From Octopus bimaculoides (lineage: Eukaryota): a stretch of 64,000 bases of DNA. Positions 25,530 through 45,693 of the stretch are shown one piece after another. Under the pieces are notes generated by a model. That model was not told the DNA's origin and made no database searches. It saw nothing but the letters and a program-made list of their open reading frames with translations. Every line of letters begins with the position of its first letter. Position 1 is the stretch's first letter. The stretch covers positions 821,185-885,184 of the forward strand of contig NC_069007.1 of assembly GCF_001194135.2 (NCBI RefSeq). Reading direction: 5' to 3'. The translations under genes and the position numbers were made by a program.

Positions 25530-26150
25530 ACGAAGGCAGCGGCGGCGAAGGGGCAGAAAAAATTTCGAGCGGCGTGTGCTCAAAAGCTGAGCGGTATTTC
25601 GTCTGTCTTTAGGCTCTGAATTCAAATTCCGCCGAGGTCGACTTTGCCTTTCATCCATTCACATACTGGGGTCGATCTAGCCGATTGGACCCATCCCCCA
25701 AAATTTCGGGTCTTGTGCCTAGTGTAGAAAAGAATAACCCTTTTTGTTTTAAGCACAAGGACCAGAATATAAGGGGAAAGGGAATAGTCGATTACATGGC
25801 CCTCAATACTGAACTGGTATTTATTTTATTGTTTTAGAAATGGCGAAAAGCAAAGCCGAATTCGTGGAATTTGAACTCAGAACAAAGACGGGCGAAATAC
25901 CGCAAAGCATTTTGCCCGGCGTTAACGATTCTGCCAGCTTATATTAATAGTAATAGTTATTCTCTCTAACTTATGGCTCAAAACCAGCAAATTTGAGGGG
26001 AGGGGTTAGTCAAATTTATCGAATTCAGTGCGTATTCTGTTGACCCTTGAAGGTTGAAAGCGAATGTCGATCTCGGTAGAATTTGAACTCAGAACGCCAA
26101 CGACCAGAATAAATATGGCTAACAAATCAGTGCGTTTGGCGCCTGAAGTA
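25530..26150. mobile_element. Cluster of three SINE family A copies (+ 25530-25735, - 25740-25940, - 25960-26150)
   Basis: Repeated GAATTTGAACTCAGAAC / TTCAAATTCCGCCGAGGTCGAC motifs in alternating orientation. Confidence 0.8.
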
Positions 26151-28129: not shown

Positions 28130-29679
28130 AAAATTTATAAATATATAAACAAATATAAATATAAAAATTTATAAATATATAAACACAAATATAAATACAT
28201 AGACGTACTTGCGATGTTTGAATGTCCGTATTAGAATCAATGAAGAAAGCTAGTATCCATGAGGAGTCCTGACTAAGTACTTTGTCCGTATTAGAATCAA
28301 AGAGGAGAGTTAGTATTCATGAGGAATAAGTAGTAAGTAGTGAGTCTTACGGCTGTCTAGAGAAGGTATTGGTTGGTATGGGCGCGCTAACTCCAACCAT
28401 AGCAGTTATCTATGCTTCTTTGAGAATTAAAGGATTCAAAGAGTTTTTAAAATTTTAAGAGATATGAAATATTTGTGATTTTTTAATAAACGAATGTTTG
28501 GTCAGATCATACTCTTCTTTCGGATGATATAATTAGAATTAAAATTGCAGGTTAAAGTACATTACTACGCTATAATTAATATTATAAGACGAATTCATTA
28601 TATGAGGGGTGACTAGATTACAATTCTGTACACTAATTACTTTTGGGGAAGAATTTAAAAGTTGAAAGATATTTATGTCTATAGGTAATTATGACATCAG
28701 ATATCTTATTTTTGTTAGTACGGAGTTCGTGGATGGCTTCCTTCGTGCATAAATTGCAATTTTTAGTGTGTGTCTTATATGGTGTGGTTTCCGTTTATTA
28801 TAGACCAATCTAGACTAAATTCTTTATTGTGCATTTTTAATTTATTAATATGGGAAGTTAGTGTGGTTAAATTTTTAGTTTCGTGATTGGTAAATGAGTT
28901 TGTATTTGCCCTATATCTAATTTTAAAATCAGTTGTACTTCCTATGTAAATCTTATTAGGTTCATTAAGGGTTGAAATTCAACTTTATATTCGACATTTC
29001 TCCTTCAACAGAAACATTTTAGGGGACAAAGCTCCCTATTACAATTACGTGTTTTATTTCCAGGTTTAGCCTCTCTATTTTTAATATCAGTGTTCTTACT
29101 ATTATTCTTCATATTACACTCAGCTAAATTATCATCTCTGTTAATGCTGTTATTGCTAAGTTTAAGTCTCTTGTTAACCGCGATTATAGATCCTAGATTA
29201 GGTGTGATTGAGTAAGATAATTCAAAGCAGGATCTAATAGATATGGAGTGACATTTATGACCCAGTAGGAAGTTCCTATCGATAATGCTAAAAAATAATT
29301 TAGGGAGGTTTCTGACCTGGTAGGAAAAGTAGGGTGTGAACGATAGAATTTCCCTTCTCCTCTCTGATTTGTTCCTATTCTGCCCCGTATAATTATTATG
29401 ATAATTGAATAAATTATAATATCTTCTGAAATGTTGTTGGTTTCTATATACGACGGAGTTGCTCATGGGAGATGTGTCGATGTTTGAATTCGCAATATTT
29501 GGAAACCGTTTGCCTAATTCGTTTTTAAATATGGTGTCCTTAATATAATACATTTTTCTCTTGAATCCACTGTCTTTTAATGCTGTTTTATAAAGAGGAG
29601 AAAAATCATCGAAGATCTTTGCGTTTGCGGATAATTTAGAAATTCTTATCGACATACTTTTGATTATCCCCTTAACGAT

Positions 29680-32388: not shown

Positions 32389-34486
32389 TATTTACTGATA
32401 CACAAATACACCGGTACAGCGTTTTTGTTTAGCCCTTCAGCCTTTCGACGCTTCTGCCACTTTGCTCCTATTGCAGGTAGGAGTGTCGGCCCAATGCAAA
32501 GCCAGAATCTTGAGAGCGATGCCTGGAATCCGTAAGGCACAACTCTCAGGGCTATTGACGCATACAAATCAACACGTCGGAACGAGAACTGATCCACGTG
32601 GTGGATCTGTCCCTCTCTACACACACTCACGCACATATGTGTGGTGTGCATACATAAATGTATCTCTCATACATATATATATATATATACACACACGCGC
32701 GCACATACATGTATATATAAGTCTATGTATGTGTGTGTGATTGTGTGTTAGCCATGTGAACGTCTAAATGATGTTCGTCTGTTTCGTTATAAGACTTCAT
32801 GTTTGTGTTATACGTCATATTTTATGAGTAATAGCTAAAAATCAATAAATAACTGCTCGTTGTAAAACAAAAACGTACAAATAAACAAATAAACTAGAAA
32901 CGGGGCAAGACAGCGAACAACAATAAGATTCGTTTAACATTTTAGTATGAATATTGTTGTTGGTATGAAAGCAATTAATATATAATAAGTAAATCACCCC
33001 CGGACACTTCACCAATCAATTATGCCGTTACGATATATTTTTTTTCTTTTTACTCAATATTTCGCCATTTCAACTCACTAAAAAAAATGTCAAAAATTAT
33101 AAATAATTGATTAAAAATTCCCACGAAGTTTTACTTGCAGAATCGCTGTTTTTTTTTTTTTTTTTTTTTTAGCCCTAGATTAGGCCTGATAGACTGTACA
33201 GACCTATAATCCTATTTTTATATCGGCAATTCTTTTTCAATGACTAAATTGTCTGTTTTTGTTTTGTCTCAACATCACTGATCCATCTAGATATAAATTA
33301 TCCGGTGTGAGCTAGCTTTAATTAAGAATACAGCGAGTGTCTTCCGACGTATTACGTTGGTATTCACCTTCGAGTTCCCACTTATGTTGTCAGAGTAGTT
33401 ACAACAACAATCAATATGGCCTTATCAATCATACCTCCTCTCTGAGCTCCGAGTCTCACCAATGTAAAATTATATTTTCATCCTTTTAGTATCAATAAAT
33501 AAGGGAACCAACCCAGGGAAGCGGAGTAGCCCACGGAGATATCTTGTTGTATTTGTTCTATGATGAGGGAGCTGATACATTTTTATTTGATCTGTTAAAC
33601 ACAACAGCCAAATTGCCATCAAATCGTACCCCAGCATTAAACAACAACAGGACAAACAGTCGGATATTGACGTACAGTGTACAGTCTGTAAGAAATAGAC
33701 GAGATGGCCTTCAAATAACTGTTTTAGTCAAAGGTCACCTGGCGATGATCTGACATAAGCCACAAACGCCCTGTGCAAGAGTACCAACCTCTGCTATCCG
33801 GACCACTATTTTCAGACATCCTACACTGTTGTTTGTTACTCTGAGATAATTCTTGGGCTATTCCCGAGCTACGAGACTGCCAAGCCATGTAGCGCGTGCC
33901 GGGCCCGAATCGATCAAACCTAAAACCGACCAGTCACCGGGGTGCGAAGTAGGTATACGGTAAGTATCACATCAATGTTATAGTATTTAATTCATTAAAA
34001 TCATTAAATTAGTTAGCCTCACTCTTGATATTTTCGAAGTCATTAATCATAATAATACATTGATTATAATTATAATAATAATTTTGTCGTAACGACTAGG
34101 AAACCTGCCGGCCAGCCCAGCAAACCAAATTTTTTTTTGTTTTGTTGTTCATGTCCACTTTTACTAGACACATGCATTTTACACCTCTCTTTGTGGTCAA
34201 CTTTACACTAACTGTTTGTTCATTTTGCGTACTTCACACTGACTATTTTTGTAACCAACCAGCGATCTGCCGTATCAGCTGTTCATATAAACAGCCCTCC
34301 TCGCCTAACGTTCAAATCAGCAATTGACACAAACTGTTCACATCGACAGATTCACTTCGACTCGTGGGTAAAACCACCCAGTCCACGTTAAACAATCACG
34401 TGACCATAATCAATTATTTTTTCATTACAATTAATTTATAAATTTGTCTTCCCTTACAAAACTAGAGAGCAGTGTTNNNNNNNNNN

Positions 34487-43901: not shown

Positions 43902-44826
43902 CTGTATGTATATGTGCAGGCGTGTGTTAAGAAGCTTGCCTCTCAACAACATGGTTCGGGGTTCAGTCCCACTGTGACACCTTGGGAAAATGCCTTCTAG
44001 TATTGCCTCAGACTGACCAAAACTTTGTGAGTGAATTTGGTCAACGGAAACTGGAAGAAACCCGTCGTATATACATATATGACAGCATTTAGTAATTGAA
44101 GTGATGGCCTACTTCTTTAAAGAAATGTGAATCACCACATAATCACCATGTGTTTGTGTCTGTGTGTGTGTGTGTGGGTGCTTGGAATAATACTGTTCAT
44201 TCTATAGTCTTTTGTTTGCTGTTGTACTGCCGCGCACAACTCTTTAGAATTTCTGATTGGAGGACCTTTGTCAAAGAAGCTGTTTTCAAGATCGGACAAA
44301 CCGTCGTGGTAAATTAGCATATGGCAAAACAAGATGAACTACTAAAGTGTGCGGGTATGCGTATATGCACGTTTAAATCTATATGTGCTCGTATGTTGTG
44401 TTTGTACCTGTGTCTGTGTGTCTATATGTTCTCGTATGTGAGTCTTTGTGTCTGTAACTGTACAGGTTCGAAGTGTGCTGCTGTGTGTGCGTGTTTGTAT
44501 GTGTGCGAAGTGTATTTCTATGTGCTCCTATGTATATGTATATACAACGTGTTACTGTGTGCTCCACTGAATGATTTTGTGTGTGAACACGTGTGTCTGT
44601 GAGTTCGTATGTATGTGTGTGTGTGTGTGTGTGTCCATGTGAGTGTATGTCCATGTGTGTGTGTGTGTCCATGTGTGTACCTGTGTTTAGATGAGCAACA
44701 TGTCGAGGGGCCCTGAGGCCGACCAAGTCTGTTTCTTTGGAAAAAACCGCGACACAGTTTTTTCTAAATAAATCCTTCTGATACTTATAATAAATATTTT
44801 GAGGGACATAACACAAGCGGCCTTAC

Positions 44827-44961
44827 CATATCCTGTTGAAAAAGGGACTCCGGGATTTATACATACATCATACAGATCGAATGTGTTCTGATTTTCAGAT
44901 TTTCATTGTAGCAAAATTATGTTTTCGTTATTATTCAGAAAAATAATGATGGTACACTTAC
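44827..44961 (-). other. Cryptic non-coding RS-exon (135 nt) downstream of the candidate recursive site
   Basis: Begins with GTAAGT at 44961 and ends at ATG|GTAAGG (donor G at 44826). Stop codons in all three frames: GTA AGT GTA CCA TCA TTA TTT TTC TGA; G TAA; GT AAG...CAA TGA. Confidence 0.4.
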
Positions 44962-44997
44962 CTGCAAAGAAAAAAATAGAAAATGGCAAAACGTTAG
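44956..44997 (-). other. Candidate recursive splice site (3' splice site fused to a 5' splice site, CAG|GTAAGT)
   Basis: Minus strand reads catCTAACgttttgccattttctatttttttctttgCAG|GTAAGTgtacc. CTAAC branch point at 44997-44993, branch A 32 nt upstream of the junction. No AG between 45037 and the acceptor. Junction at 44962|44961. Confidence 0.6.
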
Positions 44998-45095
44998 ATG
45001 AGAAACAGACAAAGGATAAAACAAATATATTCATTAACTTCATAATTTCGCTAAATTACCCTCTTTCACGTTCTCTTCGCTTTCTTTTCACTCTC

Positions 45096-45133
<38 letters not shown>

Positions 45134-45693
45134 TGTCTGTGTCTCTCCCCCACTCTCTGTCTCTCTCTCTCTCTCTCTCCCCTTTGCATGTCTGTCTTCT
45201 TTAAGCACGTTAATCTTGATTCAGCAATCCCTCGAATATCGCGGGTGTTACGTTCCCAAACTCCTACGATATGTAAAAATCCGCGAAGTAGAAACACTAC
45301 TGTACTGTATATATATATATATATATATNNNNNNNNNNNNNNNNNNNNNNNNNNNNNNNNNNNNNNNNNNNNNNNNNNNNNNNNNNNNNNNNNNNNNNNN
45401 NNNNNNNNNNNNNNNNNNNNNNNNNNNNNNNNNNNNNNNNNNNNNNNNNNNNNNNNNNNNNNNNNNNNNNNNNNNNNNNNNNNNNNNNNNNNNNNNNNNN
45501 NNNNNNNNNNNNNNNNNNNNNNNNNNNNNNNNNNNNNNNNNNNNNNNNNNNNNNNNNNNNNNNNNNNNNNNNNNNNNNNNNNNNNNNNNNNNNNNNNNNN
45601 NNNNNNNNNNNNNNNNNNNNNNNNNNNNNNNNNNNNNNNNNNNNNNNNNNNNNNNNNNNNNNNNNNNNNNNNNNNNNNNNNNNNNNNNTAATA

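What the first reader, a model, noticed from the sequence alone, without database searches (positions are those of the whole stretch)
44827..45037. Recursive-splicing ratchet point with a poison RS-exon on the minus strand
Seen in sequence: a consensus branch point (CTAAC, 32 nt upstream), a 74-nt AG-free zone, a T-rich tract and CAG joined directly to a perfect GTAAGT. A second strong donor (ATG|GTAAGG) lies 135 nt downstream, and the intervening exon has stops in all three frames. This was the only full-strength YAG|GTRAGT I found on either strand by eye. Established knowledge: this zero-length-exon plus cryptic RS-exon layout defines recursive splicing in Drosophila long introns (Ubx ratchet points) and in vertebrate long neuronal genes (Sibley et al. 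2015). Inference: this window lies in a very long minus-strand intron removed stepwise. I am not aware of recursive splicing being documented in cephalopods or molluscs, but I could not check the literature.
Basis: partly seen in the sequence, partly recalled or inferred. Interest (0 to 1): 0.85.

Follow-up and report, generated by a model that had tools for sequence, protein, structure and literature searches.

The report
Candidate recursive splice site in octopus DNA
A textbook "acceptor joined to donor" splice signal really is on the minus strand of this octopus-like sequence and is rare by chance, but with no gene model, RNA data or related genomes to hand it stays an untested candidate for stepwise (recursive) intron removal.

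Summary
The sequence features are all present at the stated coordinates. On the minus strand: CTAAC with branch A at 44994, a 74-nt AG-free zone, a T-rich tract, CAG|GTAAGT with the junction at 44962|44961, and a second donor ATG|GTAAGG 135 nt downstream.

One side claim is wrong. The window holds three YAGGTRAGT 9-mers, not one; the other two lie in purine-rich low-complexity DNA with no acceptor context.

With a simple splice-site matrix, the site is both the best acceptor and the best donor on its strand. It is the best of 310 AG|GT sites (28.5 bits; the next scores 22.0). Such a composite is expected about 0.006-0.009 times per window. That is roughly a few hundred per octopus-sized genome, and a few tens if a downstream donor is also required.

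"Stops in all three frames" carries no information: 66% of random 135-nt segments show it.

The decisive points could not be tested. No exon, host gene or transcription direction was found, no orthologous DNA could be fetched, and there are no RNA data.

Repeat-derived ORFs match Octopus bimaculoides best. No held paper reports recursive splicing in molluscs.

Verdict: a good motif-level candidate, about 40% likely to be a real ratchet point. If real, it is a new member of a known kind. Interest is moderate, not 0.85.

The parts
44993..44997 (-). Branch-point-like CTAAC; branch A at 44994, 32 nt upstream of the acceptor G
   Evidence: CTAAC falls in the branch window by chance with p = 0.018.
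44964..45037 (-). 74-nt AG-free zone; the previous AG ends at 45038
   Evidence: Only 3.9% of AG-to-AG gaps in the window are this long.
44965..44992 (-). Polypyrimidine tract GTTTTGCCATTTTCTATTTTTTTCTTTG between branch point and CAG; pyrimidine richness runs upstream to about 45018
   Evidence: 92% pyrimidine over 12 nt, 85% over 20 nt, 80% over 30-50 nt.
44962..44964 (-). Acceptor CAG; the putative recursive junction lies between 44962 and 44961
   Evidence: The 3' site scores 15.6 bits, the best on the minus strand.
44956..44961 (-). GTAAGT, the partial 5' splice site that would be rebuilt after the first splicing step
   Evidence: With the genomic CAG the donor scores 12.9 bits, the best on the minus strand.
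44827..44961 (-). 135-nt putative cryptic RS-exon, with stops in all three frames
   Evidence: The stops are uninformative: 66% of random segments show them. Only one weak internal donor (4.5 bits at 44866) lies inside.
44821..44826 (-). Second donor GTAAGG (ATG|GTAAGG), 9.4 bits, weaker than the rebuilt one
   Evidence: A donor this strong within 30-250 nt has p = 0.07.
44962..45043 (-). Rival reading: ATG at 45043-45041 opens 27 codons (MKLMNIFVLSFVCFSSNVLPFSIFFFA) plus one base, ending exactly at the CAG|GTAAGT donor (phase 1)
   Evidence: No convincing downstream phase-1 exon and no homologue.
44687..45007 (+). Possible target-site duplication (TTAGATGAGCAACA at 44687-44700, TTAGATGAGAAACA at 44994-45007) round a 293-bp segment. 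On the + strand, the A-rich end of that segment is the antisense of the pyrimidine tract.
   Evidence: Not significant: 9% of random repeat-free segments hold such a repeat.

Best explanation
The element is a composite splice signal on the minus strand, most likely a recursive splice site (ratchet point) inside a long intron of an octopus gene transcribed right to left in this window.

Proposed mechanism (inferred, not shown):
1. The branch point at 44994, the pyrimidine tract and the CAG, together with the downstream donor at 44826, define a 135-nt cryptic exon by exon definition.
2. The upstream exon is spliced to 44961.
3. This places its last bases in front of GTAAGT and rebuilds a strong 5' splice site.
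4. That site outcompetes the weaker GTAAGG donor.
5. The 135-nt segment and the rest of the intron are then removed in a second step, leaving no trace in mRNA.
6. If the second donor were used instead, the transcript would carry stop codons.

Shown: the sequence elements, their relative strengths and their rarity. Inferred: transcription of this strand, intronic location, and any use by the spliceosome.
For: - Exact match to (Y)nNCAG|GTAAGT (consensus from PMC5126111).
- Best acceptor and best donor on the strand, and a composite 6.5 bits above the runner-up of 310 AG|GT sites.
- Chance expectation is 0.006-0.009 per window. It drops about 15-fold if a downstream donor is required and further with a branch point.
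- The rebuilt donor (GTAAGT) is stronger than the downstream one (9.4 bits). This is the relation reported for cryptic RS-exons in flies and vertebrates (PMC8605326, PMC6224609).
- No coding exon was detected anywhere in the 64 kb, which is compatible with a very long intron.
- Ratchet-point motifs are enriched 4- to more than 20-fold on the sense strand of introns over 50 kb in all five invertebrates tested, including sea urchin. The background is 0.07-0.12 per 100 kb (PMC2773006, Table 2). One strong site in 64 kb is therefore about what an invertebrate-type long intron would hold.
Against: - There is no evidence that this strand is transcribed or that the window is intronic. The absence of exons fits intergenic DNA equally well.
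- After masking repeats there is no strand skew ((T-A)/(T+A) = -0.008; (G-C)/(G+C) = +0.009). AATAAA counts are equal on the two strands, 75 against 81.
- By chance alone an octopus-sized genome should hold of the order of 10^2 such composites (extrapolated).
- Vertebrates, whose genomes are large and repeat-rich like the octopus genome, show no motif enrichment (PMC2773006). Only about 9-10 fully suppressed intronic sites were counted definitively in mammals (PMC8605326, PMC6224609).
- The 135-nt segment is longer than fly RS-exons (about 50 nt, and mostly under 100 nt to the next donor).
- A possible target-site duplication suggests the tract may have arrived with a retroposon, which would argue against an old conserved site.
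- No conservation data could be obtained.
Confidence: 0.4

Rival explanations
1. Chance composite with no function: a T-rich stretch that happens to end in CAGGTAAGT, in DNA that is intergenic or antisense to any transcript.
For: - A rate of 0.006-0.009 per window means several hundred per 2.7-Gb genome, and about 30 even with a downstream donor.
- The window has 78 blocks of at least 80% pyrimidine over 50 nt.
- No exon, gene or strand bias was found.
- The window is rich in simple repeats, with 318 tandem arrays. In squid, simple repeats correlate negatively with gene density (PMC9068888).
- The features were picked after looking at the sequence.
Against: All canonical elements coincide: strict CTAAC (p = 0.018), a long AG-free zone, a perfect GTAAGT, and a downstream donor (p = 0.07). 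Taken together, fewer than about 10 such sites are expected per genome.
Confidence: 0.3
2. An ordinary exon of 135 nt (44961-44827), included in mRNA and belonging to an untranslated region or a non-coding RNA, that merely begins with GTAAGT. This would be an 'annotated RS-exon' kept in the mRNA rather than a zero-length ratchet point.
For: - A strong acceptor plus a donor 135 nt later is simply an exon.
- About 6,800 human exons rebuild a 5' splice site at their upstream junction, and 94% of these are constitutive (PMC6224609).
- Stops in all frames fit a non-coding exon.
Against: - A perfect GTAAGT that is stronger than the exon's own donor favours skipping (PMC8605326, PMC6224609).
- No neighbouring exons or gene were found.
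- Expected numbers are small: a rough estimate from exon counts recalled from memory gives about 5-15 such exons per genome.
Confidence: 0.15
3. The first coding exon of a small secreted protein. ATG at 45043 is followed by a hydrophobic, signal-peptide-like 27 residues, ending in phase 1 at the donor CAG|GTAAGT. On this reading the pyrimidine tract is coding sequence, not an acceptor.
For: - An open frame runs from ATG to the donor, with A at position -3.
- The peptide MKLMNIFVLSFVCFSS... resembles a signal peptide. Phase-1 ends are common after signal peptides (own knowledge).
Against: - T-rich DNA encodes Phe, Leu, Ser and Ile in any open frame, so the hydrophobic peptide comes for free.
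- No plausible phase-1 continuation lies downstream.
- No homologue was found.
- This reading leaves the CTAAC and the AG-free zone unexplained.
Confidence: 0.05
4. By-product of a retroposon. A roughly 293-bp element inserted on the + strand (44701-44993) is flanked by 14-nt target-site duplications. Its A-rich 3' end, read in antisense, supplies the pyrimidine tract, as in antisense Alu exonisation. The splice-like motif is then young, and is either neutral or newly recruited.
For: - A direct repeat, 13 of 14 identical, lies at 44687-44700 and 44994-45007.
- On the + strand, the 3' copy immediately follows an A-rich stretch with 19 of 31 A.
Against: - 9% of random repeat-free segments hold such a repeat.
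- There is no second copy of the segment in the window.
- Pyrimidine richness continues beyond the repeat.
- The 'tail' is too degraded for a repeat that is 93% identical.
Confidence: 0.1

Closest known systems
Drosophila intronic ratchet points with cryptic RS-exons (Ubx, kuz, Bx; Burnette 2005, Duff 2015, Joseph 2018/2021)
   Same: - Exact consensus (Y)nNCAG|GTAAGT.
- A long pyrimidine tract.
- A weaker donor downstream that could define a cryptic exon.
- A cryptic segment that is out of frame and full of stops.
- The host is an invertebrate.
   Different: - The putative RS-exon is 135 nt, against about 50 nt in flies (most fly sites have the next donor under 100 nt away).
- Fly sites are ultraconserved and lie in introns over about 10-20 kb. 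Neither point is known here.
- The host genome is about 20 times larger and rich in repeats.
Vertebrate recursive splicing in long neuronal genes (CADM1/2, ROBO2 and others; Sibley 2015, as summarised in PMC6224609 and PMC5126111)
   Same: - A YAG|GT core.
- An RS-exon defined by a downstream 5' splice site.
- Competition between the rebuilt donor and the downstream donor.
- A stop-containing RS-exon.
- A large genome with very long genes.
   Different: Only about 9-10 fully suppressed sites were counted definitively in mammals, and each rests on junction reads, saw-tooth coverage and conservation. Here there is sequence only.
Annotated (expressed) RS-exons repressed by the exon junction complex (Blazquez 2018, PMC6224609)
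   Same: An exon-sized unit that begins with a 5' splice-site motif.
   Different: Those exons are included in mRNA and mostly coding. Here the segment is non-coding, and its leading GTAAGT is stronger than its own donor, which favours skipping.
Antisense SINE/Alu exonisation (own knowledge)
   Same: A pyrimidine tract that may be the antisense of an A-rich retroposon tail, followed by AG.
   Different: No repeat family was identified, and the flanking direct repeat is not significant.

Membership tests
Recursive splice site / ratchet point | [quoted passage not shown] | tested here: met
   TTTTCTATTTTTTTCTTTGCAG|GTAAGT scores 15.6 + 12.9 bits, the best of 310 AG|GT sites.
Recursive splice site / ratchet point | Usable acceptor context: branch point 18-45 nt upstream and no intervening AG | tested here: met
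   CTAAC with its A 32 nt upstream, and a 74-nt AG-free zone. Chance 1.8% and 3.9% respectively.
Recursive splice site / ratchet point | A downstream 5' splice site that defines a short cryptic RS-exon and is weaker than the rebuilt donor | tested here: met
   ATG|GTAAGG at 9.4 bits, 135 nt downstream (p = 0.07). This is longer than the fly norm of about 50 nt, or under 100 nt (PMC8605326, PMC6224609).
Recursive splice site / ratchet point | Lies on the sense strand inside a long intron | tested here: inconclusive
   No exon or gene was found in 64 kb. There is no strand skew or poly(A)-signal bias. The genome annotation cannot be reached with these tools.
Recursive splice site / ratchet point | Splicing intermediates: junction reads from the upstream exon, lariats, saw-tooth coverage | not testable with these tools
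   No RNA-seq access.
Recursive splice site / ratchet point | Conservation of the acceptor|donor core above that of the flanking intron | not testable with these tools
   ORFs round the site found nothing in the protein collection. A 24-mer across the junction found nothing in metagenome contigs. There is no route to other Octopus genomes.
Recursive splice site / ratchet point | The cryptic exon would disrupt the reading frame (stops or out of frame) | tested here: met
   stops in all three frames. Met, but uninformative, since 66% of random 135-nt segments do the same. 135 is also a multiple of 3.
Ordinary initial coding exon with signal peptide | ATG, an open hydrophobic frame to a donor, and a downstream coding continuation or homologue | tested here: not met
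   The frame is present, but there is no convincing phase-1 continuation and no homologue.
Retroposon insertion | Target-site duplications, an A-rich tail, and other copies of the element | tested here: inconclusive
   A 13/14 direct repeat next to an A-rich end, but such repeats occur in 9% of random segments. No other copy in the window.

The most novel reading that the evidence does not exclude
Octopuses remove giant introns stepwise at fly-type zero-length ratchet points guarded by stop-laden cryptic exons. This would be the first case in a mollusc or any lophotrochozoan, and would imply that recursive splicing dates back to the bilaterian ancestor and persists in a large, repeat-rich, vertebrate-sized genome.
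Probability: 0.4. Interest if true: 0.5.

Novelty: new member of a known kind. Interest (0 to 1): 0.35.

Why it matters
Recursive splicing has been shown experimentally only in flies and vertebrates. Motif enrichment alone suggests it in a few other invertebrates (PMC2773006). No held paper addresses molluscs.

Cephalopods combine a vertebrate-sized, repeat-rich genome with long neuronal genes. Whether they follow the fly pattern (hundreds of ratchet points) or the vertebrate pattern (few sites and no motif enrichment) bears on how long introns are handled in general.

A single motif cannot answer that. It does give a concrete site to look at in existing octopus RNA-seq, and it motivates a cheap genome-wide test of sense against antisense strands. 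If the site proves unused, the finding is just one of the few hundred chance composites expected in such a genome.

Tried and rejected
1. Orthologous or identical DNA via spurious ORFs. Five ORF pieces spanning 44690-45100 on both strands were searched against 5.8 billion protein clusters and gave no hit.
2. Host gene via exons. A crude exon finder and filtered stop-to-stop ORFs were used. Forty-four ORFs (3,731 aa with spacers) gave no Pfam family and no homologue. Twenty-two further splice-flanked ORFs plus the signal-peptide-like peptide gave none.
4. Rfam and tRNA scans of the window found nothing.
5. A 24-mer across the junction gave 0 matches in JGI metagenome contigs.
6. Strand of transcription from composition and poly(A) signals after masking repeats: no asymmetry.
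7. Is the site part of a repeat? There is no in-window copy. A target-site-like direct repeat was found but is not significant.
8. Signal-peptide first-exon reading: no downstream continuation.
9. Sibley et al. 2015 could not be read. Its facts are taken from PMC6224609, PMC8605326 and PMC5126111.
10. Rejected as evidence: 'stops in all three frames' (66% by chance) and 'only YAGGTRAGT in the window' (false).

Full report
**What is in the sequence**

On the minus strand the region reads ...GAAATTATGAAGTTAATGAATATATTTGTTTTATCCTTTGTCTGTTTCTCATCTAACGTTTTGCCATTTTCTATTTTTTTCTTTGCAG|GTAAGTGTACC....
- CTAAC lies at 44997-44993, with the branch adenosine at 44994, 32 nt before the acceptor G at 44962.
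- The previous AG ends at 45038, giving a 74-nt AG-free zone.
- The tract before CAG is 92% pyrimidine over 12 nt and 80% over 30-50 nt.
- GTAAGT lies at 44961-44956.
- A second donor, ATG|GTAAGG, has its GT at 44826.
- The segment between (44961-44827) is 135 nt, with 3, 5 and 1 stop codons in its three frames.

YAGGTRAGT is not unique. It occurs three times in the window. The other two, TAGGTAAGT at 57831 and 58733 on the + strand, lie in purine-rich TAGGTA-like low-complexity DNA, with 30% and 0% pyrimidines upstream. They have no acceptor context.

"Stops in all three frames" is what 66% of random 135-nt pieces of this AT-rich window show, so the "poison" property adds nothing.

The genomic CAG is removed with the upstream intron piece. 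The rebuilt donor would take its positions -3 to -1 from the unknown upstream exon, so only GTAAGT is certain to contribute.

**How unusual it is**

I scored the window with a generic metazoan position matrix. It is my own crude matrix, not MaxEntScan.
- The site scores 15.6 bits as an acceptor, the best of 2,927 AG sites on the minus strand.
- It scores 12.9 bits as a donor, the best of 3,765 GT sites.
- As a composite it scores 28.5 bits, first of 310 AG|GT sites on both strands. The runners-up are 22.0 (+ strand, 32477) and 20.3 (- strand, 29316).

Two independent null models agree:
- Counting acceptor-like contexts (9 in the window) and multiplying by the observed frequency of GTRAGT after AG gives about 0.006 expected per window.
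- A 40-Mb 4th-order Markov simulation trained on the window gives 0.009 per window for composites of at least 28.5 bits, and 0.006 when both sub-scores are required.

Further features that belong to the published definition each cut the expectation:
- A donor of at least 9.4 bits within 30-250 nt downstream has p = 0.07.
- A YTRAY branch point has p = 0.22; the strict CTAAC has p = 0.018.

I extrapolated to both strands of a 2.7-Gb genome. The size is from memory (Albertin et al. 2015) and was not checked here. Chance gives roughly 400 core composites (3 simulated events, so the range is wide), about 30 with a downstream donor, and fewer than 10 with a branch point as well.

So the site is rare, but a genome of this size is expected to hold chance look-alikes.

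**Surroundings**

The window is typical gapped, repeat-rich metazoan DNA:
- 4,445 N in 15 gaps.
- 318 tandem-repeat arrays; 22% of the window is masked when the gaps are included.
- Several copies of an interspersed repeat.
- No Rfam family and no tRNA.

The site lies in a roughly 400-bp unique stretch between two CA/TG-type microsatellites and has no other copy in the window.

A SINE-derived ORF (61573-61962, minus strand) finds uncharacterised proteins of Octopus bimaculoides as its best matches (XP_052828027.1 at 76% identity, A0A0L8GQ56, XP_052826731.1).

**Host gene and strand**

This is the crux, and it could not be settled. I extracted stop-to-stop ORFs in six frames and filtered them for complexity, repeats, GC content and flanking splice signals. 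I then searched 67 of them, about 5,200 residues.
- The 44 ORFs of the first set that were scanned gave no Pfam family.
- None of the 67 gave a match in a collection of 5.8 billion protein clusters that includes the NCBI O. bimaculoides proteome.

The window thus holds no detectable coding exon. That fits a giant intron and an intergenic region equally well.

After masking repeats, (T-A)/(T+A) is -0.008 and (G-C)/(G+C) is +0.009. AATAAA occurs 75 times on one strand and 81 on the other. Nothing indicates a direction of transcription.

In squid, gene density falls with simple-repeat content, and gene deserts of several Mb exist (PMC9068888). That tilts slightly towards intergenic DNA.

**Conservation**

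This was not obtainable. ORF fragments across the site found nothing, so no contigs of other octopus data could be pulled in. A 24-mer across the junction is absent from the metagenome contigs.

**Comparison with what is known**

- The fly consensus is (Y)nNCAG|GTAAGT (PMC5126111). The site matches it exactly.
- Fly ratchet points need a cryptic RS-exon of about 50 nt with its own, weaker donor. Mutating the ratchet donor forces inclusion of the cryptic exon. There are more than 500 such sites in flies, and they are ultraconserved at the acceptor|donor core (PMC8605326).
- Most fly sites have the next donor less than 100 nt away. Efficient intronic sites number 197 in flies and 10 in humans in the first surveys (PMC6224609).
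- About 6,800 annotated human exons rebuild a 5' splice site, and 94% of them are constitutive (PMC6224609). An exon that merely starts with a donor-like motif is therefore a real alternative.
- Detected fly sites have strong motifs and twice the conservation of control AGGT sites (PMC6110457).

The most useful paper for a prior is Shepard et al. 2009 (PMC2773006, Table 2). Ratchet-point motifs occur at 0.07-0.12 per 100 kb on the antisense strand of large introns in every animal tested. On the sense strand they are enriched:
- 21.7-fold in fruit fly.
- More than 10-fold in mosquito.
- 8-fold in beetle.
- 8.2-fold in sea urchin.
- 4-fold in bee.
- Only 0.9- to 1.5-fold in eight vertebrates.

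No mollusc was included. If octopus behaves like the other invertebrates, 64 kb of long intron should hold about 0.3-1.4 motif sites, and this one would very probably be real. If it behaves like vertebrates, whose large repeat-rich genomes it resembles, the site is more likely chance.

**Weighing**

The relative plausibility of the readings depends on how many sites with these features each would produce genome-wide:
- Chance: about 30 with the downstream donor.
- Ordinary non-coding exons beginning with GTAAGT after a strong acceptor: my rough estimate is 5-15.
- True ratchet points: unknown, from none to thousands.

Spreading my prior over that unknown gives:
- About 0.4 for a real recursive site.
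- About 0.3 for chance.
- About 0.15 for an ordinary included exon.
- The rest for two minor readings.

The first minor reading is an initial coding exon. ATG at 45043 opens 27 hydrophobic codons that end exactly at the donor in phase 1. However, T-rich DNA yields such peptides in any case, no continuation was found, and no homologue was found.

The second minor reading is a retroposon origin. A 13/14 direct repeat at 44687-44700 and 44994-45007 brackets 293 bp. The A-rich + strand end of that segment is the antisense of the pyrimidine tract. However, 9% of random segments have such a repeat.

**Literature**

No paper in the held library contains "recursive splic*" together with octopus. The single cephalopod co-occurrence lies in a reference list, and the two mollusc co-occurrences are single mentions in papers on unrelated topics, not opened here. 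A search with lophotrochozoan terms brought up nothing with the phrase.

**Verdict**

Its key premises (sense strand, long intron, use by the spliceosome, conservation) remain untested.

If confirmed, it would be a new member of a known kind, in a new phylum. That is useful and mildly surprising, not categorically new. Interest is 0.35.

Noticed in passing
window 44687-44700 and 44994-45007 (+): A 14-nt direct repeat, 13/14 identical and 307 nt apart, brackets the whole splice-like element. The 3' copy overlaps the CTAAC. On the + strand it follows an A-rich stretch, like target-site duplications round a retroposon. It is not significant on its own: 9% of random segments have one.
   Followed up: partly
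window 45043-44962 (-): An ATG-led open frame of 27 hydrophobic codons (MKLMNIFVLSFVCFSSNVLPFSIFFFA) ends in phase 1 exactly at CAG|GTAAGT. It looks like a signal-peptide first exon, but T-rich DNA would give this anyway.
   Followed up: partly
window 44845-44821 (-): A second acceptor-like site (CCCTTTTTCAACAG|, 8.9 bits, first base 44832) sits only 6 nt before the second donor (GATATG|GTAAGG), forming a micro-exon-like AG...GT pair.
   Followed up: no
window 57831-57839 and 58733-58741 (+): Two further TAGGTAAGT 9-mers lie in purine-rich TAGGTA/GA-repeat DNA without any pyrimidine tract.
   Followed up: yes
window 29005-29655 (-): The longest non-repetitive ATG ORF (216 aa, ...ILSFTPYFSYQVRNLPKLFFSIIDRNF...NCNRELCPLKCFC). 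From memory it resembles the N-terminal part of ORFs of GIY-YIG/Penelope-type elements common in invertebrates. Neither Pfam nor the protein collection gave a hit. It also holds the third-best AG|GT composite (29316, 20.3 bits).
   Followed up: partly
window 953-1265, 25581-26122, 59996-60189, 61624-61968, 62650-62857 and others: Multiple copies of an interspersed repeat (SINE-like, with ORF motif RPRWNLNSERKDRRNTAKHFARRA). The best protein matches are uncharacterised Octopus bimaculoides proteins (76% identity), which supports the taxon.
   Followed up: partly
window 9995-10384 (+): A GC-rich (0.47-0.49), high-complexity open frame of 130 aa is flanked by fair splice signals (acceptor 10.0 bits, donor 8.9 bits). 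It was the best exon-like candidate in the window, yet has no Pfam family and no homologue.
   Followed up: partly
window 32456-32483 (+): The second-best AG|GT composite of the window (TGCCACTTTGCTCCTATTGCAG|GTAGGAG, 22.0 bits; first base after the junction at 32477). This is within what chance gives: 0.55 expected per window at 22 bits or more.
   Followed up: no
whole window: There are 15 assembly gaps (4,445 N) and 318 tandem-repeat arrays, so the window is a gapped scaffold rich in TA, CA and GA microsatellites. A 360-N gap at 45329-45688 lies only 370 nt upstream of the site on the minus strand.
   Followed up: no
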